64,000 bases of DNA from Octopus sinensis (lineage: Eukaryota): NCBI RefSeq assembly GCF_006345805.1, contig NC_043001.1:101618001-101682000 (forward strand), in the 5' to 3' direction. The position numbers and the translations under genes were made by a program. Below the pieces are notes generated by a model, which saw nothing but the letters and a program-made list of their open reading frames with translations, did no database searches and was not told where the DNA came from. Positions 21,478 through 32,949 of the stretch are shown here, piece after piece. The stretch's first letter is position 1. Each line of letters opens with the position of its first letter.

Positions 21478-21688
21478 TATGTGACCGTGTGTGTACCGTT
21501 GGCGATTTTTTTCCTCTGTCTTCCCTTCCTTGGACCTTTCCTCTTCCTATGTTTCTGATGAAGAGCTCCACTCGAAACATTAAATCCTGCTTCGTTCTTT
21601 CCTTTCCTGGGTGTCAAATAACACTATACATGTTCCACGTCCTCGCGTTGTTGTGTTTTCTCTTTGTCTTTTCATGTTTGGATTAACT
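21478..21688 (+). mobile_element. Penelope-type pseudo-LTR fragment with hammerhead motif at 21551-21585
   Basis: GTTT-CTGATGA-A-GAG-CTCCA-CTC-GAAA-CATT-AAAT; same family as 8095-8266; ends in (TA)n. Confidence 0.7.
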
Positions 21689-21692
21689 ATAC

Positions 21693-21726
<34 letters not shown>

Positions 21727-21796
21727 GTATATATATATATGTATATATATTGTATATATATATATGTGTATATATATATGTATATATATGTATATA

Positions 21797-21881
<85 letters not shown>

Positions 21882-21898
21882 GTATATATATGTATATA
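21689..21898. repeat. (TA)n-based array
   Basis: Direct reading. Confidence 0.95.
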
Positions 21899-23591
21899 TG
21901 ATTGATTGATTGATTGATTGATTCTAGTTTCAGCTTATGAGCTGTGGCCATGCTGGGGCACCGCCATTTGGTGTTGCTACTTGGTTTCACTTCATGGAGG
22001 CTTTCTAGCAACTGCTATTTGGTGCATGAGAGAGTTCGATGCAGCTGCCCTCATCTGCCCCTCCTGCCGTGAAGTTGGTTCATCTGGGACACCTGACAGG
22101 AAGAGATCCATTTTCATTTTAAGACATCTGTATCCACCCCATGCAGGTCTCTCAGGTTCTTCGGGAGGATATTGAAGAGCTGTGGGCCTCGGAAGCCCAG
22201 GCTATCACAGAATCTTGTCCTACATCTTGATGGCAGGTTTGGAGTCCTAGGCACCACGCAGTGGCGCCCAGTTCTGGCATTTGCGTAACTCTCGATGCCA
22301 AAGTTCAGGACACTTCCCTCCAGGATCTTCCAGATGTATATTATGGCATATCTTTCCCGCCTACGCTCCAGGGAATATAATTTTAATCTCTTGAGTCTTT
22401 CCCAGTAGCTTACATTCTGCATAGAGGCTATCTTCTTTGTGTAGCTTCGTTGGATCGCTTCAAGTTCTGTGATCAACTTGACACTGGATGGTGACCATAG
22501 CTGAGAGCAATAGTCAAAGTGGCTTAGGACAAGTGTCTTCCAGAGGACCATCATGGTTTCTTGTTCTCTTGTTCTAAAGGTTCTAAGAATCCAGCCAGCC
22601 AGCCGTCTACATTTCATTGTCAGTTTAGCAACATGTACATGAAAGGTCGCGTCATCACTCATGTGAATACCCAGGTCACGCACTGATTGTCCTCTGGGAT
22701 TGCAATCCCTCCGGGTCCAGTGTATTCATGGGTATTGCATTCAGTTTTGCATGCTGATAGTATAAAGCTTGAAACTTTCCAGCATTGAACTGCATGCTAT
22801 TCTTTTCAGCCCACTTGTATATTTCGTCCAGCTCACATTGCAGGTGTTTAGTGTCCTCAGGTTCTGTATTGCCTGTGAAACTTTTGTATCATCTGCATAA
22901 CTTGTGATCGTGGCTCTCTGCATGGCTGAGGGCATGTCTGAGAGGGCCATTATGAACAGTAGTGGTCCCAACAGTGCCCTGCGGAACACCGCTCACTATT
23001 TGTGTGTTAATGGAGGTGGCCCCATTGGCTACTACCACCTGACTTCTATCCTTCAGAAAGTCATGAAGCCATTCCCCAGTTTTCCAACTATGTTGAGATC
23101 ACGCATTTGTGACATATCATTCCATGATCGACTTTATCAAAGGCCTTTGCAAAGTCGAGATATATCACTTCCACATTTGAGTGGTTGAGCAGCTGTTTCA
23201 GCACCCAGTCATAGTGTTGTAGGAGCTGAGTTAAACAGCTTCTCCCTGGTCGGAAACCATGTTGGGTGTCGGGCAGCAAGTCATTCTCTTCAAGGAAGGT
23301 GATCAGCTTCCTTCTGACTATTCGTTCCATGACCTTGCTGATGTGTGAGGTCAGAGAGATAGGTCTATAGTTTTGGGCTTCCGCTCTGCTACCTCCTTTA
23401 TGAATGGGGCATATTTTACCTTCCTTCAGTTTTCCTGGAAGTTTGCCAGCTGCAAGGAAGCTCTGAAAGAGGAACTGCAGTGGTCTTGCTAGGACTCTCT
23501 TACATGCTTTTAGGAGGATTGCCGGAATCCATCGGGGCCAGTAGCTGAGTCTGTTTTCATTTCATCTATAGCCTTGGTTACATCGTCTTCC
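21899..23591 (-). mobile_element. 5'-truncated copy of the CR1-group LINE (RT C-half, 3'UTR, (AATC)n tail)
   Basis: Collinear with 24872-26577, with a handful of substitutions and many 1-2 bp deletions. Confidence 0.95.
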
Positions 23592-23828
23592 ACATATATA
23601 TATCTATATATATATATGTATATATATATTATATATATATATATGTTATATATATATATGTAATATATAATGTATATATATATATGTATAATATATTATG
23701 TATATATATATGTATATATATATGTATGTATTATATGTATATATATATGTTATATATATAATAATATGTATATATATATATATATGTATATATATATGTA
23801 TGTATATATATGTATGGTATATATTATG

Positions 23829-23866
<38 letters not shown>

Positions 23867-24270
23867 TATATAATGTTATATATATATATATATGTATGTA
23901 TATATTATGGTATATATATATAATGTATATATATATATGTATATATATATTATGTATATATATATATGTATATATATATATGTTATATATATATATATGT
24001 ATGTATATATATATGTATATATATATATATGTATATATATATATGTATATATATATATGTATATATATATATGTATATATATATATGTATATATATATAA
24101 TATGTATATATAATGTTTATAATATATATATAGTATATATATATATGTATATATATATTATATGTATATATAATAGATATGTATATATATATGTATATAT
24201 ATATATGTATATATATATATATGTATATATATATATGTATATTATATATATATATATATATGTATATATA

Positions 24271-24341
<71 letters not shown>

Positions 24342-24377
24342 GTATATATATAATATGTATATATAATCTAATATATC

Positions 24378-24413
<36 letters not shown>

Positions 24414-24679
24414 ATATATATGTATATCTATATAATGTATTATATAATATATATATTATATATGTTGTATATATATATATGGTATTGTATATATATATAT
24501 ATGTTATGTATATATATATATAATATATATATATCTATGTTTGTATTATATTAAATATATATATATATATAATGTATGTATAATAATAATATATATATTA
24601 TATATATAATATAATGTATATATATATATATATATAATATATGTATGTATATATATATATATAATATATATAATATTGT

Positions 24680-24712
<33 letters not shown>

Positions 24713-24871
24713 TATATTATTATTATTATTATATGTATAATATATATATATAGTATATATATGTATATATATATATATATATCTATATATATATATATGT
24801 ATCTTATATATACTATGTATATATATATATATATGTATATTTTATATAATATATATATATATATATATATA
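23592..24871. repeat. Long degenerate (TA)n array
   Basis: Direct reading; explains ORFs 23670-24523. Confidence 0.95.
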
Positions 24872-24965
24872 ATGATTGATTGATTGATTGATTGATTCTA
24901 GTTTCAGCTTATGAGCTGTGGCCATGCTGGGGCACCGCCATTTGGTGTTGCTACTTGGTTTCACT

Positions 24966-27963
24966 TCATGGAGGCTTTCTAGCAACTGCTATTTGGTGCA
25001 TGAGAGAGTTCGATGCAGCTGCCCTCATCTGCCCCTCCTGCCGTGAAGTTGGTTCATCTGGGACACCTGACAGGAAAAGATCCAGCTTCATTTTAAAGAC
25101 ATCTGTATCCACCCCATGCAGGTCTCTCAGGTTCTTCGGGAGGATATTGAAGAGCTGTGGGCCTCGGAAGCCCAGGCTATCACAGAATCTTGTCCTACAT
25201 CTTGATGGCAGGTTTGGAGTCCTAGGCACCACGCAGTGGCGCCCAGTTCTGGCATTTGCGTAACTCTCGATGCCAAAGTTCAGGACACTTCCCTCCAGGA
25301 TCTTCCAGATGTATATTATGGCATATCTTTCCCGCCTACGCTCCAGGGAATATAATTTTAATCTCTTGAGTCTTTCCCAGTAGCTTACATTCTGCATAGA
25401 GGCTATCTTCTTTGTGTAGCTTCGTTGGATCGCCTCAAGTTCTGTGATCAACTTGACACTGGATGGTGACCATAGCTGAGAGCAATAGTCAAAGTGGCTT
25501 AGGACAAGTGTCTTCCAGAGGACCATCATGGTTTTTTGTTCTCTTGTTCTAAAGGTTCTAAGAATCCATCCAGCCAGCCGTCTACATTTCATTGTCAGTT
25601 TAGCAACATGTACATGAAAGGTCGCGTCATCACTCATGTGAATACCCAGGTCACGCACTGATTGTGCCTCTGGGATTGCAATCCCTCCGGGTCCAGTGTA
25701 TTCATTGGGTATTGCATTCAGTTTTGCATGCTGATAGTATAAAGCTTGAAACTTTCCAGCATTGAACTGCATGCTATTCTTTTCAGCCCACTTGTATATT
25801 TCGTCCAGCTCACATTGCAGGTGTTTAGTGTCCTCAGGGTTCTGTATTGCCTGTGAAACTTTTGTATCATCTGCATAACTTGTGATCGTGGCTCTCTGCG
25901 TGGCTGAGGGCATGTCTGAGAGGGCCATTATGAACAGTAGTGGTCCCAGAACAGTGCCCTGCGGAACACCGCTCACTATTTGTGTGTTAATGGAGGTGGC
26001 CCCATTGGCTACTACCACCTGACTTCTATCCTTCAGAAAGTCATGAAGCCATTCTCCCAGTTTTCCAACTATGTTGAGATCACGCAGTTTGTGACATATC
26101 ATTCCATGATCGACTTTATCAAAGGCCTTTGCAAAGTCGAGATATATCACTTCCACATTTGAGTGGTTGAGCAGCCGTTTCAGCACCCAGTCATAGTGTT
26201 GTAGGAGCTGAGTTAAACAGCTTCTCCCTGGTCGGAAACCATGTTGGGTGTCGGGCAGCAAGTCATTCTCTTCAAGGAAGGTGATCAGCTTCCTTCTGAC
26301 TATTCGTTCCATGACCTTGCTGATGTGTGAGGTCAGAGAGATAGGTCTATAGTTCTTCTTGGCTTCCGCTCTGCTACCTCCTTTATGAATGGGGCATATT
26401 TTACCTTCCTTCAGTTTTCCTGGAAGTTTGCCAGCTGCAAGGAAGCTCTGAAAGAGGAACTGCAGTGGTCTTGCTAGGACTCTCTTACATGCTTTTAGGA
26501 GGATTGCCGGGAATCCATCGGGGCCAGTAGCTGAGTCTGTTTTCATTTCATCTATAGCCTTGGTTACATCGTCTTCCTTTATATCGATGTAATCTATCGT
26601 CGCCGCCTCTGATTTTATATCTGCAGTGGTAAAAAAGTCAGTTGGATTGGTGATTTGGAGATGCCCAAGGGGTGGAGTGAAAACACTCTTGAATTGCTCA
26701 TTCAGTATTTCACTTACCCTCATTGGTTTTCCTGTAAGTGTGCCATCCTTTTCGAGGAGTGGCCCTATTCTACAGTGCACTGTAGCTGTTTCTTTGGCAT
26801 ACCTGTAGAAAGCTCTGGGGTTAGATTTTATGTTTTCTATAGCCCAGGCTTCTTTGTCTGCTCTTTCTTTTTCATGGGAGAGTTGCAGACATTTTTCGAT
26901 TTCCAACAGTTTTTTTTTAGGCGGGACTTTTCACTGCTTTCAATCTGTTTGTTTAGGCGATTTGAAAATTTCGTACGCCGTCTCATTAAAATTTTCCTCT
27001 CTCTGGGGATTTTGTTCTTGTGTACAGTGGCCTTTCTCTCTGGGACACATTTGTAGCATATGGCTTGCATTACAGACATGAATTGTTGAAGTTTCACGTC
27101 GATGTCTGGCGAGGAGAGACATTTAGGCCAGTTTTGTTTGAGGATCTCTTTCTCAATTTGTTTCCAGTTTGCCTTATGGTAGTTCAAGCTGGAAAGATTT
27201 TGAGGTTTCTTGTAGGCTGCATGTCCGTGCTCTCTTTTGGCCCGTACATGGTCAGCTCTATCATGTTGTGATCCGAGAGTAGTGTCGGTGTCACTTTCAC
27301 ATTATGGATGAGATCCATGTCATTTGTGAAGCAGAGATCCAGTGTGTTACCTGCCCTGGTTGGTTGGAGTATTACCTGCTCCATGTACAGGGTGTTGATG
27401 AGGTTCAGGAGGGACCTCGCCTGTCCTCGTTCACATCTTGTCATTCCTGGGAGAGAAAGGCCCTCGGGCCATCTGACATTGGGCAGATTGAAGTCTCCCA
27501 TAAGAAGCACACCTATGTGTTGTTCTAATGTGGTTAGAATTTCTTCTATTTTTATAAGGCAGTCTTCAAACTTGCCCACATGGCTTGGGGCATCTGGAGG
27601 GCGATATGTAGCACACACAACTACATCAAGTTGCCTAATATGTACAATTAGTGTGTCACACACCGAGTTTGAGTATGACAAGAGGACCTGGGGTGTGAGG
27701 TCCTCACGGATGTACATAGCAACACCTCCATGACTCCTTTCTTTCCTGTCGGTCCGTAGTACAGCATACTGTGGTATGTGTAACTCCGCATCTGCTATGT
27801 CCGGTTTCAGGTGCGTTTCTGTAAGTGCTATGCATAAGGCTTGATTGCATGCAACAAAGTCTCTCAGGAACGGGATCTTTGTCCTGTTACTGAGTGTTTG
27901 CAGTCCTCTGATGTTCAGTAGGAGTATCGAGGTGAGGTGTACGTTGTTGCCGGCGGTGTCCAT
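24966..27963 (-). CDS. LINE ORF2: apurinic-like endonuclease + reverse transcriptase (999 aa if two bases are restored)
   Basis: APE motifs LLNIRGL, ALTETHL, GGVAMY, YRPP, GDFNLP, TLDL, LSDHNMI; RT motifs YRPISL, QHGFRPGRSC, YLDFAKAFDKVDH, GVPQGTVLGPLLF, YADD, RDLG. Three track ORFs joined by two -1 shifts placeable at T4 27198-27201 and T9 26910-26918. Confidence 0.9.
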
Positions 27964-28812
27964 CCTGTGTCTGTTTGCTGTGGTGGTCTGGTATATAGTG
28001 GGTAGTCCCACCTGCGGGCTTGGGTTTGATGAAGCCAGGTCAGCTGCTGTACAATCTTTTGTGCCATGCACAAAAAATTGTTGCTCAGCAGCTGCTCTTT
28101 CGACAACATCATGTTGGCTGTTTGTGGCGCGCAACATCTGCGTACCTCCGTTTTGGGGCAGGTGGTGCGTGGTCCATCCCTTTTCTTTGTGTTGATGGTT
28201 TGTCCATCTGCCTCGTGTCTCTGTGGCAGGGTCCCCGATGTGCAAAGCGGCAGCCTGCACCTTCCTTTCCATGCCAGCAGGAACCTCTCAGGTAGAACAT
28301 ACACACCCGTGTGCGCTGTTTGGTTCCATCCTTTGCGGTTCCACTTCTATTTCTGGTTGTTTCACTCTTTGGTCCTGCTTGAGCTTTTTCTTTTCCTTTA
28401 GCTCTTCCAGTCCTTCTTTTAGTTCTTCTTCCTCCCTCTACCTCTTCACCGGGTTCTCCGTCTCCATGGCCCTTGCTGCCGGTTGGAGAACTTGCACCTG
28501 GGTTCACTTCCCGGGCAGGTTTCTCATTCAAAACCTCCTCCCGGGCGTCCACCAGGTGGGGGTGACTTCTTTCATCGTCTCCATTCTTGCCATCTTTGCT
28601 CCGCTCGTTCTCAAAGATGGCATCAAGTGCGCCAATGTGCGACCGTACAAGCGCACGAATTCCTGTCTCTTTCGCTCCATCTGAGCAGCTGTCCTCTTGT
28701 AGCCTCTGCTCTTCAGCGCAGCCGCAATCACCTCCCTAGGGCTATCTCCGCCGGCGCACTCCCATGCTCGTACGAATAAATCCAGCTCGTCACGTCTCCA
28801 TGCTCTGGACAT
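27915..28812 (-). CDS. LINE ORF1: Myb/SANT-like N-terminus + CCCH zinc finger (299 aa if two bases are restored)
   Basis: Track ORFs 28528..28812, 28109..28552 and 27915..28304 are in successive -1 frames; 898+2=900 nt; motifs WRRDELDLFVRAWE...IAAALKSRGYKRTAAQMERK and CMFYLRGSCWHGKEGAGCRFAH. Confidence 0.75.
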
Positions 28813-28869
28813 GCTGGATAATCCGTCTATCCGTTTATCTATCTAATTATGTTCGAGAGAAGACAGGAA

Positions 28870-30115
28870 GATATTAAGGCTAATTAGAAGATAGAGTACT
28901 TGAAAAAGAAATATTAACAATATTAAAGTTTGTGTAAAAACGTTATTTGGGTAAAAACGTTATTTAATCTTAAGGCTAATTAGGGGATAGAGTATCTGAA
29001 AATGTATTAGCAATATTAATATTATATTAGAGTGTGGATAAAAACGTTGTTTAATCTTAAGGCTAATAGGAGATAGAGTATCTGAAAATATATTAGCAAT
29101 ATTAATATTATATTAGAGTGTGGGTAAAAAAAAACGTTATTTAATATCTTAAGGCTATTTGGAGATAGAGTATCTGAAAATATTAGCAATATTAATATTA
29201 TTAGAGTGTGGGTAATATTAAACGTTATTTAATTTAATCTTAAGGCTAATTAGAAGACAGAGTATCTGAAAAATTATATATACAATATTAAGCAATATTA
29301 ACCGTTATTTAATTTAATCTTAAGGCTAATTAGACGTTATAATATTAAACGTTATTTAATTTAATCTTAAGGCTAATTAGAAGAGAGTATCTGAAAATAT
29401 ATTAGCAATATTAATATTATATTTAGTGTGGATAAAAACGTTATTTAATCTTAAGGCTAATCAGGAGATAGAGTATCTGAAAATATATTGGCAATGTTAA
29501 TATTTATTAGAGTGTGGGTAATATTAAACGTTATTTAATTTAATCTTAAGGCTAATTAGAAGATAGAGTATCTGAAGAATTATTACAATATTAAAACATA
29601 TTAAACGTTATTTAATTTAATCTTAAGGCTAATTAACAATAATTATTAACAATATTAACAATATTAAACGTTATTTAATTTAATCCTAAGGCTAATAACA
29701 CAATATTATTAACAATATTAAACGTTATTTAATTTAATCCTAAGGCTAATTAGACGTTTTTAATATTAAACGTTATTTAATTTAATCTTAAGGCTAATTA
29801 GAAGATAGAGTATCTGAAAAATTATTAACAATATTAAAACAATATTAAACGTTATTTAATTTAATCTTAAGGCTAATTAACAATATTATTAACAATATTA
29901 AACAATATTAAACGTTATTTAATTTAATCCTAAGGCTAATTTGACGGTATCAATATTAACGTTATTTAATTTAATCTTAAGGCTAATTAACAATAATTAT
30001 TAACAATATTAACAATATTAATGTTATTTAATTTAATCCTAAGGCTAATTTGACGGTATCAATATTAAACGTTATTTAATTTAATCTTAAGGCTAATTAG
30101 AAGATAGAGTATCTG
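28870..30115. repeat. AT-rich tandem array in the LINE 5' region (about 18 copies of a CGTTATTTAAT(TTAAT)C(T/C)TAAGGCTAAT core, spacing ~47-97 bp)
   Basis: TAAGGCTA counted about 18 times with variable modules (AGAAGATAGAGTATCTGAAAA; AGAGTGTGG). Confidence 0.9.
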
Positions 30116-30574
30116 GAAAATTATTATATCGAGAACAGTTATTGAAAATGTAAACAAACCAAATGACGATCGCAACTTTAACTAAGATGTAGGCCTAAGT
30201 GAAAGATAAAATAGAATAATAAATAAAAGATGTAATAGATGAAATTGATACTTAATCCAACAATGTGGTCTGGATTATTTTTTTTGGTTTACGGGATTTT
30301 TTTCAGGAGAGATGCTTCTTTTTTCTTTCTTGCAGGAGATAACTTGATTCAGTTATTTTTGCACCATGTGCGTTTCGGCGATAATGAAAATTACTGTGTA
30401 TATGTATATATTTATATATATTTTTTTTTAATATTTTTAAACCAAAGTGTTGTAGTGATCTCTATGACTTAGAGTTTTACGTTTTGCAACTACAGTGGGT
30501 TATTTCGCCGTTCTATGCAAACTTTTTCACAGAGCAAAGGCAATCACGTCTTTCTCTGCTGAAAACGGAACCGG

Positions 30575-30595
30575 ATATAATATATATTATATATA

Positions 30596-30641
<46 letters not shown>

Positions 30642-30702
30642 TATATATATATAATATATATATATATAATAAATATATATATATATATATATATTATATA
30701 TC

Positions 30703-30740
<38 letters not shown>

Positions 30741-30783
30741 TATATATATGTTGATATATATATACATATGTATATATATATAT

Positions 30784-30830
<47 letters not shown>

Positions 30831-30922
30831 TTATATATAATATATTATATATATAGTATATAATATATATATATATATATGTTATATATATATATATTTA
30901 TAATATATATATATATTATATG

Positions 30923-30959
<37 letters not shown>

Positions 30960-31169
30960 GTATAATATATACTATATTATGTATATATAATATTGTATAT
31001 ATATATATATTATATATAATGATATATATATGATATATATATATATTATATGTATATATATATATAGATATATATATATATATATATATACGTATATATA
31101 TATATATAATGTATATATATTATGTATATGTATTATATATATGTATATGTTATATATATATATATATGT

Positions 31170-31201
<32 letters not shown>

Positions 31202-31262
31202 ATATGTATATATATATTATATATGTATATATCTATATATATTAGATATAGATATATATAGA
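30575..31262. repeat. (TA)n array
   Basis: Direct reading. Confidence 0.95.
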
Positions 31263-32949
31263 TTATATGTATCAGATGGGCTTCCACCGTATATAACGGT
31301 CAACTAATTTCTCTTTCACATAGAAGACATAAAGACATTGGTCAATTGAAAGATACTTAACAGACATTTGCCAAATGCTTCATTCAGCTGCATTAAACCT
31401 GTGCAACGTTGTTGTGCAGCAAACTTTGTTCATCACAATCATACTCCCCCCCCTCATGTGGTTGCATTGAAATAGTTATCTCTAAATTCATATTTTCTAT
31501 AAATCAAATCTTTTCACTAATTGGTTAATTAATCACAATTAACATCTCCACACATAAAATATACATTAAAAAAAAAAAGAAGCATCTCATTTGCTACTTA
31601 ATTTGTTGGTGTTCTTATAAGGATCATTGGATACTTAGTTGCGTTTTTCTAAAACAATTTTCGCAATTCTTTGTAGGAGAGAGAGAAAAAATTTATATCT
31701 ATAAACTTGTTAAGATTTACATTGAATTAAGAGAAATCAGATTTATAATTCGTTTTGTATGAAGTGATGTTGAGTAATGCCTGCAAGGGAACCCCTAAAA
31801 TGTTAACAGCATTTTCTGTAATAGCAAGATGCAAAAAATTTAATAATAAATACAATGTCTTGTTTGTTGGTTTAAACAACGAGAGTAAATTTTTAAACTG
31901 CTATGTTTAATGTAGAATAGCTTTTCTTTCGTTTTCCTCTTCTATGCATGAAGTTTGTGAGATTGTACAAATATCATGCTGAGATAGGAAAATGTAGATT
32001 GGAGTAAAATAAATAATGTTAAATCAGATTAAAACAAAGCAGGAATATATTTCAGAGTTGAGGTATGAAATGGAGTGAATGTGCCAGATTATATTAGATT
32101 GCAAATTCTAAAGAAAAAAAACAACAACCAAGAGAATTGAAGTCGTTATCTAAGTGTTTAATGACACGTTTACTTTAGAATACTATCAATGTCATCAGTT
32201 TTAACATTTTCAATTTATTCTAAGCTATAAGAAATTATGCTATTGAAAATCTTAAAGAAACTGTCTTTCAAATCTTTAAACATAGAAAAGAAAAATACTA
32301 GATTGTCATCTAGTTAAGTACAGGCTATCATACTTGAGCCAGAAATAACTTTTAATTACTTGAAATTATAAACGTAATAAGAAAAGTCATTATCCTAATT
32401 AAATTCATTTTCGGATTCGGCAAGAGAGAAATATCACAATCAGCATTAAGTTAAACAGAGACATACTATCATAGTTGGGAGCAAGTCTGATCTTTGGAAC
32501 CCATAGTAACTACTCTGAGCAGGTTTACGCCTAAATGGACCTCCTCAGCAAAGCATAATCCACTCAATGCTTCCCAAGTTATCAGAATGACTGACAGAAG
32601 TTATGCTTTGTGTGATGAACATTCACTGATTTGATAAATTAAAGACATTGGATGAGTTCCCAAGATTGCCTTCGGTATGAAGAACACACAGTTAAGTGCA
32701 GACTAACATACCAAACCTGCTAAGCTGAAAGCAATTTTTAATCAGTTGATATTTATAACTTAAGAAGGAAACTTAGTCATCTCTTTACATTTGATTACAA
32801 GAAGTCTGTTTGATATTTGAACCAGTGACAACACATTTCTATAAAGAGGTTGAAAACAAACATTGTTATAACAATATCTTAAATGTGTTTCAGGAGTTAT
32901 TATGAATTTCTTATTGTGGAGGCAGTGAGCTTGCAGAATTATTAGCATG

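What the first reader, a model, noticed from the sequence alone, without database searches (positions are those of the whole stretch)
27915..28812. Unusual LINE ORF1: Myb/SANT (trihelix-like) domain plus CCCH zinc finger
Seen: W-x3-E-x3-F-x2-AW...IAAAL-x2-RGY-x-RTAAQMERK...LDAIF follows the Myb/SANT-like DNA-binding pattern (PF13837 type, as in GT-1 factors and Harbinger ORF proteins). It is followed by an acidic then basic linker and C-x7-C-x8-C-x3-H. Established: ORF1s of the CR1/L2 group are typically RRM, PHD, CCHC or esterase. Inference: a captured DNA-binding module that could guide the RNP to AT-rich targets or bind the element's own 5' repeat array.
Basis: partly seen in the sequence, partly recalled or inferred. 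Interest (0 to 1): 0.7.

Follow-up and report, generated by a model that had tools for sequence, protein, structure and literature searches.

The report
Octopus LINE ORF1: helical domain plus CCCH
This is the decayed first gene of an octopus jumping element (a LINE); its protein family joins a small, probably Myb/SANT-like helical domain to an RNA-binding CCCH zinc finger, a combination absent from the published surveys I could read, and that matters mainly to transposon specialists.

Summary
Window 28812-27915 (minus strand) is the ORF1 of an APE+RT LINE. This copy is broken: three frameshifts in ORF1 and two in ORF2.

It belongs to a real protein family. Intact 289-318 aa versions exist in Octopus vulgaris, Argonauta hians and an unnamed sequencing run, each directly upstream of a related ORF2 wherever flanking DNA is available.

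The family has four parts:
- a basic N-terminal helical domain of about 80 aa;
- an acidic-then-basic linker;
- one CCCH finger with C-x7-C-x8-C-x3-H spacing;
- a conserved C-terminal motif that overlaps the ORF2 start.

The CCCH call is solid: a family profile hits CPSF30 at E=1.3e-6 and MBNL1 at 3e-5. The Myb/SANT call is only half supported. An AlphaFold model (pLDDT 87) fits Myb/SANT domains best (RADIALIS, prob 0.89, TM 0.76, 2.0 A). However, no Foldseek hit is significant, no Pfam hit is on record, the profile search of PDB finds no Myb, and hhalign gives P=0.012. The trihelix protein GT-1 ranks only 29th.

Relatives at about 45% RT identity carry a PHD-like finger plus several CCCH fingers of the same spacing. 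The N-terminal module was therefore swapped, while the CCCH and C-terminal core is old. Targeting to AT-rich DNA remains speculation, although the Octopus copies do abut (TA)n tracts.

The parts
27915..28812 (-). ORF1 of the LINE. A pseudogene with three frame changes; the conceptual product is about 300 aa.
   Evidence: Homologous over its full length to intact ORF1s P0143 (318 aa, O. vulgaris), P0123 (291 aa, A. hians) and P0124 (289 aa).
28586..28812 (-). N-terminal basic helical domain: helices 7-20, 25-35 and 42-60, plus a fourth at 63-79. Predicted Myb/SANT-like three-helix core. A presumed 10-nt deletion at about 28645-28654 shifts the frame between helices 3 and 4.
   Evidence: Conserved in 16 proteins. 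AlphaFold with the alignment gives pLDDT 87. The best structural class in Foldseek is Myb/SANT. Core pI is about 10.4. No Pfam or PDB profile hit.
28304..28585 (-). Linker, acidic and then basic. Poorly conserved and length-variable among relatives.
28238..28303 (-). Single C3H1 (CCCH) zinc finger, CMFYLRGSCWHGKEGAGCRFAH, with spacing C-x7-C-x8-C-x3-H.
   Evidence: C, C, C and H are invariant in 13 fingers. The profile hits CPSF30 at E=1.3e-6, MBNL1 at 3e-5 and RBM22 at 4e-4. The single sequence hits MBNL1 at E=0.027.
27918..28150 (-). Conserved C-terminal block: RRYADV..., VERAAAEQQ, NFLCMAQKIVQQLTWLH, TRPPQ, YSY-stop. Frame changes lie near 28127 and 28079. The last 49 nt overlap ORF2.
   Evidence: A related (D/N)FL...Q..L motif occurs in the PHD-type ORF1s of L005, L006 and P0141.
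27184..27963 (-). ORF2, APE endonuclease part (ATG at 27963). A frame change follows at about 27190.
24966..26906 (-). ORF2, reverse transcriptase and C-terminal part (646-aa ORF). A further frame change lies near 26900.
   Evidence: PF00078 relatives, 88% identity to P0001 and 59-63% to Argonauta hians proteins. Also.
24877..24965 (-). 3' UTR with two conserved hairpins (24939-24920 and 24918-24905), then AAACT and an (AATC)5 tail (24897-24877). There is no poly(A).
28868..30126 (-). 5' tandem array of units 48-110 bp long (mostly 86-95 bp). It carries 18 copies of TTAAGGCTAAT as read on the + strand. Presumed 5' UTR or promoter monomers.
   Evidence: The motif is absent from the related loci.

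Best explanation
The interval is the first open reading frame of a non-LTR retrotransposon (APE endonuclease plus reverse transcriptase, microsatellite-tailed; CR1/L2-group by its features) in an octopod genome. This copy is a dead relic, but the protein family it represents is real and specific to octopod elements.

Shown:
- The family has four parts: a basic N-terminal helical domain of about 80 aa, a variable charged linker, one CCCH zinc finger, and a conserved C-terminal helix motif that overlaps the ORF2 start.
- The CCCH finger (same C-x7-C-x8-C-x3-H spacing) and the C-terminal motif also occur in ORF1s of related LINEs at about 45% RT identity. Those carry a PHD-like finger at the N-terminus instead.

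Inferred:
- The CCCH and C-terminal core is ancestral, and the octopod lineage replaced the N-terminal PHD module with the helical domain.
- The protein works as other LINE ORF1 proteins do. It coats its own RNA in cis, through the CCCH finger and the basic linker, to form the RNP.
- The N-terminal domain is most likely a divergent Myb/SANT-type three-helix module. It takes over the job of the PHD finger, tethering the RNP to chromatin or DNA at integration, or recruiting a partner protein.
For: - Position and linkage: ORF1 lies directly upstream of the APE+RT ORF2 in the window, L001, L003, L007 and L008.
- Family: 22 relatives were found, all unnamed or 'hypothetical', from O. vulgaris, O. 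sinensis and A. hians. Intact full-length members are P0143, P0123 and P0124.
- CCCH finger: the profile hits solved RNA-binding C3H1 fingers, CPSF30 at 1.3e-6 and MBNL1 at 3e-5.
- N-terminal domain fold: the AlphaFold model reaches pLDDT 87. About 16 of the top 50 Foldseek PDB hits are Myb/SANT, and they give the best superpositions: 2cjj prob 0.89, TM 0.76, 2.0 A; PHR1 0.70; TRF2 0.67; c-Myb R2 0.66. The single-sequence model returns the same fold class.
- N-terminal domain sequence: the basic core has pI of about 10.4. hhalign against RAD/DnaJC2 SANT aligns W, E, AW/AL and sPN/tPD with P=0.012.
- Module swap: L005, L006 and L009 encode a PHD-like finger plus 3-5 CCCH fingers of the same spacing.
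- CR1/L2-group features: a hairpin 3' UTR with a short-repeat tail and no poly(A).
Against: - No sequence-profile method recognises Myb/SANT. Pfam hits on record are '-' for P0124, P0125 and P0136. The profile search of PDB gives only weak uS8 hits and RSC8 at E=5.6. hhalign probability is 3.6%.
- All Foldseek E-values are above 0.8. Homeodomains, winged-helix domains and calmodulin also appear in the lists.
- The model rests on a shallow alignment of 16 sequences from one lineage.
- The RT clade was not placed by phylogeny.
- No binding or activity data exist.
- The window copy itself cannot make the protein.
Confidence: 0.62

Rival explanations
1. The N-terminal domain is a lineage-specific helical domain with no common ancestry with Myb/SANT. 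Its resemblance is the generic one among small three-helix bundles. It would serve ORF1p self-association or contact with ORF2p or a host factor, not nucleic-acid or chromatin recognition.
For: - No Pfam or PDB profile hit.
- hhalign probability is 3.6%.
- All Foldseek E-values exceed 0.8, and unrelated helical proteins appear in the lists.
- The fourth amphipathic helix (LIRPH...LD.IL) is as conserved as the core.
Against: - Myb/SANT chains are by far the most frequent class and give the best superpositions (2.0-3.0 A, TM 0.65-0.76).
- The core is strongly basic.
- The conserved R-T..Q..RKK..F..sY helix 3 looks like a recognition helix.
Confidence: 0.28
2. One reading: a trihelix/PF13837-type DNA-binding domain captured from a host or Harbinger gene. 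It would steer the RNP to AT-rich targets or bind the element's own 5' repeat array.
For: - Both copies in the window, and both 3' ends in the O. sinensis locus L007, are followed at once by (TA)n-rich tracts.
- Copy A also has (TA)n about 450 bp beyond its 5' array.
- TA microsatellites not adjacent to these copies cover only about 0.8% of the window.
- The domain is basic.
Against: - GT-1 (2jmw) is only rank 29, with TM 0.50.
- No PF13837 hit is on record.
- No donor protein was found.
- The Argonauta copies (L001, L004) and L003, which belong to the same family, have no (TA)n flank.
- The TAAGGCTAAT array is private to this subfamily.
- A preference for TA could equally come from the APE endonuclease.
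Confidence: 0.1

Closest known systems
PHD-type ORF1 of CR1/L2-lineage LINEs (Type III of Khazina & Weichenrieder 2009; subtypes in Metcalfe & Casane 2014, PMC4120745)
   Same: Same position upstream of the APE-RT ORF2. Relatives of this element at about 45% RT identity (L005, L006, L009) have a PHD-like N-terminus and share the CCCH spacing and the C-terminal motif.
   Different: The window's family has no PHD; a helical domain sits in its place. It keeps one CCCH finger rather than 3-5. CCCH fingers are not mentioned in that classification.
C3H1 (CCCH) RNA-binding zinc fingers of CPSF30/CPSF4, MBNL1 and RBM22
   Same: Cys-Cys-Cys-His ligands, aromatic residues after the first and third Cys, and a significant profile match.
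   Different: Eight residues lie between the second and third Cys instead of 4-6, seen as a 3-residue insertion in the alignments. The finger is single rather than tandem.
Single-repeat SANT/Myb domains of the RADIALIS / DnaJC2 type (PDB 2cjj, 2m2e)
   Same: Best structural match: prob 0.89, TM 0.76, 2.0 A over 63 columns. The W..E...F..A(L/W)....(s/t)P(n/d) pattern is shared.
   Different: Sequence similarity is marginal (P=0.012). The second and third Trp are replaced by I and F/Y. The helix 2-3 loop is longer. An extra conserved fourth helix is present. The charge is basic.
Myb-like DNA-binding motifs in the ORF2 or single-ORF proteins of site-specific LINEs (R2, TRAS/SART). This comparison rests on established knowledge and was not tested here.
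   Same: A Myb-type module inside a LINE protein that could contact target DNA.
   Different: In those elements the Myb motif lies in the RT-bearing protein and its target binding is shown by experiment. Here the module is in ORF1 and no binding is known.

Membership tests
LINE ORF1 (first ORF of an APE-type non-LTR retrotransposon) | Lies 5' of, and on the same strand as, an APE+RT ORF2, adjacent to or overlapping it. | tested here: met
   ORF1 stop is at 27915 and the ORF2 ATG at 27963. The same order is seen in L001, L003, L007 and L008.
LINE ORF1 (first ORF of an APE-type non-LTR retrotransposon) | Conserved as a protein among related elements. | tested here: met
   22 relatives were found, and three intact full-length members.
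CR1/L2 group (Jockey superfamily) | RT phylogeny places the element in the group. | not tested
   No labelled reference RT set was available. There are only indirect signs: a hairpin 3' UTR with a short-repeat tail and no poly(A), and PHD-type ORF1 in relatives.
C3H1 / CCCH zinc finger | Three Cys and one His in conserved order, with a profile match to known fingers. | tested here: met
   The ligands are invariant in 13 fingers. CPSF30 scores E=1.3e-6 and MBNL1 3e-5.
C3H1 / CCCH zinc finger | Canonical spacing C-x7-8-C-x4-6-C-x3-H. | tested here: not met
   The middle spacer is 8 residues throughout the family. This makes it a spacing variant.
C3H1 / CCCH zinc finger | Binds zinc and RNA. | not testable with these tools
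   Needs purified protein.
Myb/SANT-like, PF13837 (Myb_DNA-bind_4, trihelix/GT-1 type) | Match to the Pfam profile. | tested here: not met
   The Pfam hits on record are '-' for P0124, P0125 and P0136, which contain the whole domain. I could not run Pfam or HHpred directly.
Myb/SANT-like, PF13837 (Myb_DNA-bind_4, trihelix/GT-1 type) | Structure closest to the GT-1 trihelix. | tested here: not met
   2jmw is rank 29, with TM 0.50-0.52 and 3.5 A. RAD-type and PHR-type Myb domains fit better.
Myb/SANT superfamily (homeodomain-like three-helix fold) | Three-helix bundle that superposes on solved Myb/SANT domains. | tested here: inconclusive
   Myb/SANT is the best class by TM and rmsd (2cjj prob 0.89), but no hit reaches E<=0.001.
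Myb/SANT superfamily (homeodomain-like three-helix fold) | Detectable sequence or profile similarity. | tested here: inconclusive
   hhalign gives P=0.012 and probability 3.6%. The PDB profile search finds only RSC8 SANT helix 1, at E=5.6.
Myb/SANT superfamily (homeodomain-like three-helix fold) | Binds DNA or histone tails. | not testable with these tools
   Needs EMSA or pull-down.
PHD-type (Type III) CR1/L2 ORF1 | N-terminal PHD finger. | tested here: not met
   There is no Cys/His cluster in residues 1-165 of the window ORF1 or of P0143, P0123 or P0124.

The most novel reading that the evidence does not exclude
In octopus LINEs the ORF1 protein, not the endonuclease, chooses the integration site. 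Its Myb/SANT-like domain would bind (TA)n DNA, so that new copies land in TA microsatellites. That would explain why the Octopus copies seen here are embedded in (TA)n tracts. ORF1-directed targeting has, to my knowledge, not been described for an APE-type LINE.
Probability: 0.08. Interest if true: 0.75.

Novelty: new variant of a known kind. Interest (0 to 1): 0.4.

Why it matters
LINE ORF1 proteins are built from interchangeable modules, and the published classification lists RRM, CCHC, coiled-coil/CTD, PHD and esterase.

This family adds two entries. The first is a C3H1 zinc finger as the presumed RNA-binding part; it is also present, unremarked, in PHD-type ORF1s of related elements. The second is a small helical, probably Myb/SANT-like, domain that replaced the PHD finger in octopods.

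That gives a natural experiment on what the N-terminal module of these ORF1s does. It also gives names to a set of 'hypothetical' octopus proteins. The gain is incremental for the field, and this copy is inactive.

Tried and rejected
- The search for homologous proteins with the joined 234-aa ORF1 found nothing. With the N-domain profile it returned only two family members, and no remote or Pfam-labelled hits.
- phmmer and hmmsearch of the N-domain against PDB gave only weak uS8 hits (LK.eGF.R..., E=0.03). I take these as chance, because that stretch of uS8 is helix plus strand.
- Foldseek against BFVD was uninformative.
- Rfam found no family for the 3' UTR.
- Literature searches for Myb, SANT or CCCH in LINE ORF1 returned only host-factor papers such as ZAP and ZCCHC3. 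Khazina & Weichenrieder 2009 is not held.
- I considered whether the frame-0 stretch at 28128-28078 was an insertion. I rejected that, because P0121 and P0124 show the same doubled YADAV...DAV.RAA.EQ motif.
- L010 has no recognisable ORF1.
Only the ORF1 conceptual translation was used.
Full report
**What is there**

Window 24.9-30.1 kb holds one LINE on the minus strand. Its parts, from 5' to 3', are:
- a 5' tandem array at 28868-30126;
- ORF1 at 28812-27915;
- ORF2, with an APE endonuclease part at 27963-27184 and an RT part at 26906-24966;
- a 3' UTR with two hairpins and an (AATC)5 tail at 24965-24877.

A second, 5'-truncated copy that is 97% identical lies at 21688-23591.

**The observation**

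ORF1 is read in four pieces:
- 28812-28645;
- 28654-28127, which includes the CCCH finger at 28303-28238;
- 28128-28078;
- 28079-27918, followed by the stop at 27917-27915.

The first break looks like a 10-nt slippage deletion between two GCTTGTACG repeats. The same bases read as RLY in one frame and ALV in the other, and relatives have R-S-Y-A-L-I there. This is an inference, not seen in an intact copy of this subfamily. The third break is a 2-nt loss relative to the 88%-identical copy L002. ORF2 has two more frame changes. This copy is therefore a pseudogene, and the '299-aa protein' is a conceptual repair.

**It is a real family**

A word-indexed search found nothing. The exhaustive HMMER scan of 1.84 billion representatives found 22 relatives. 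Among them:
- P0143 (318 aa, O. vulgaris CAI9734422) and P0123 (291 aa, Argonauta hians) are intact and full-length, as is P0124 (289 aa, from a sequencing run);
- fragments come from O. vulgaris and O. sinensis, all labelled hypothetical or unnamed.

The RT search pointed to octopods: 88% identity to a Logan contig and 59-63% to A. hians. In L001 (A. hians), L003, L007 (O. sinensis) and L008, the homologous ORF1 sits directly upstream of the homologous endonuclease.

The full-length alignment shows four blocks:
- an N-terminal domain with consensus W...EL...l.AW..A.G..PN..I.aALK..GF.R..aQIERKK.EF.RSY.LIRPH...LD.I;
- a variable charged linker;
- the finger CKF...G.CWHGe.G..CRFAHP;
- a C-terminal block YADAV...AA.EQ..FL.MAQ.IV.QLTWLH...RPPQ...Y.Y-stop.

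**The CCCH finger**

A profile of 13 fingers has invariant C, C, C and H. It hits solved RNA-binding C3H1 fingers: CPSF30 at E=1.3e-6, MBNL1 at 3e-5 and RBM22 at 4e-4. The alignments show a 3-residue insertion between the second and third Cys, so this is a spacing variant of the class. Pfam hits on record miss it, which shows how weak those precomputed hits are as negative evidence.

**The N-terminal domain**

The negative results come first:
- There is no Pfam hit on record for three members that contain the domain.
- The profile search of PDB gives no Myb/SANT. It returns weak uS8 hits, which are probably chance, and the first SANT helix of RSC8 at E=5.6.

The positive results follow:
- AlphaFold with the 16-sequence alignment gives pLDDT 87 and four helices, at 7-20, 25-35, 42-60 and 63-79.
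- Foldseek against PDB finds nothing at E<=0.001, but about 16 of the top 50 hits are Myb/SANT domains, and these superpose best. RADIALIS 2cjj gives prob 0.89, TM 0.76 and 2.0 A over 63 columns. PHR1 gives 0.70, TRF2 0.67 and c-Myb R2 0.66.
- Calmodulin hits have rmsd of about 10 A. Homeodomains and winged-helix domains fit worse.
- The low-confidence single-sequence model returns the same fold class.
- I confirmed the RADIALIS sequence against 2cjj. I then compared profiles: hhalign aligns 48 columns at 27% identity, with P=0.012 and probability 3.6%.
- The three-helix core is basic, with pI of about 10.4.

My reading is that this is probably a divergent Myb/SANT-type domain (about 0.6). The trihelix/PF13837 subtype is not supported, since GT-1 is rank 29. 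No donor gene was found.

**Evolutionary context**

ORF1s of LINEs at about 45% RT identity (L005, L006, L009) begin with a PHD-like Cys/His cluster, whose weak PDB hits are all to PHD fingers. They continue with 3-5 CCCH fingers of the same C-x7-C-x8-C-x3-H spacing. In L005, L006 and P0141 a related (D/N)FL...Q..L motif follows; in L009 that stretch is degraded. The CCCH and C-terminal core is therefore older. The octopod lineage replaced the PHD module and kept one finger.

This fits the modular, reticulate ORF1 evolution described by Metcalfe & Casane (PMC4120745). Their domain tables list PHD, RRM, CCHC, Tnp22, esterase and zf/lz, but neither CCCH nor Myb/SANT. A 2026 survey of vertebrate CR1-group elements reports only esterase ORF1s.

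**Mechanism (inferred)**

By analogy with other ORF1 proteins, the protein binds its own RNA through the CCCH finger and the basic linker. The whole protein has pI 9.9. The N-terminal domain occupies the place of a chromatin-reading PHD finger, so I expect it to tether the RNP to chromatin or DNA, or to recruit a partner. None of this is tested.

**The AT-rich target idea**

Several observations point towards a link with (TA)n:
- Both copies in the window are followed directly by (TA)n.
- Copy A also has (TA)n about 450 bp beyond its 5' array.
- Both 3' ends in L007 are followed by TA-rich repeats.
- TA microsatellites cover 4.2% of the window, and only about 0.8% once the three arrays beside the LINE copies are set aside.

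Against it, the Argonauta and L003 copies show no (TA)n flank, and the endonuclease could equally explain a TA preference. The TAAGGCTAAT array is private to this subfamily. 5' monomer arrays are common in CR1-group elements.

**Verdict**

This is a new domain architecture for a known kind of gene, seen here in a dead copy, and it is of moderate interest.

Noticed in passing
window 21688-24873 and 30575-31272; L007 10913-10982 and 12637-12712: The full-length copy and the 5'-truncated copy are each followed at once by long (TA)n tracts. Another (TA)n lies about 450 bp upstream of the 5' array. An O. sinensis relative shows TA-rich repeats after both of its 3' ends. This may mean a (TA)n target preference or tail-derived expansion in Octopus subfamilies. 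It is not seen in the Argonauta copies.
   Followed up: partly
window 7120 (-), 36937 (+), 52497 (-), 63378 (+): The conserved 3' hairpin motif of this LINE (GGTGCCCCAGCATGGCC.CAG...) recurs four more times in the window, with up to 3 mismatches and different short-repeat tails. These are probably SINEs or other LINE families that share the same 3' recognition module.
   Followed up: no
P0127 (O. sinensis XP_036355764.1, 'LPIN3, partial'), residues 378-446: The last 70 or so residues of this lipin gene model are 64% identical to the linker of the window ORF1. This is either an annotation chimera with a LINE fragment or an exonised piece of one.
   Followed up: no
L005 669-2273; L006 4517-5974; L009 2343-3998: ORF1s of more distant LINEs combine a PHD-like finger with 3-5 CCCH fingers. 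The CCCH part is not mentioned in the published 'PHD-only' ORF1 types.
   Followed up: partly
window 28645-28654: The first ORF1 frameshift looks like a 10-nt deletion by slippage between two GCTTGTACG direct repeats. The same bases encode RLY in one frame and ALV in the other.
   Followed up: yes
L001 2014-3428: A 39-bp unit repeated 37 times lies about 1.1 kb upstream of the Argonauta ORF1. It may be a 5' monomer array of that element. It is unrelated in sequence to the window's array.
   Followed up: no
window 24905-24939; L001, L002, L003 3' UTRs: Two hairpins in the 3' UTR are conserved across four elements. The loop of the second varies while its 4-bp stem is kept. No Rfam family matches.
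   Followed up: partly
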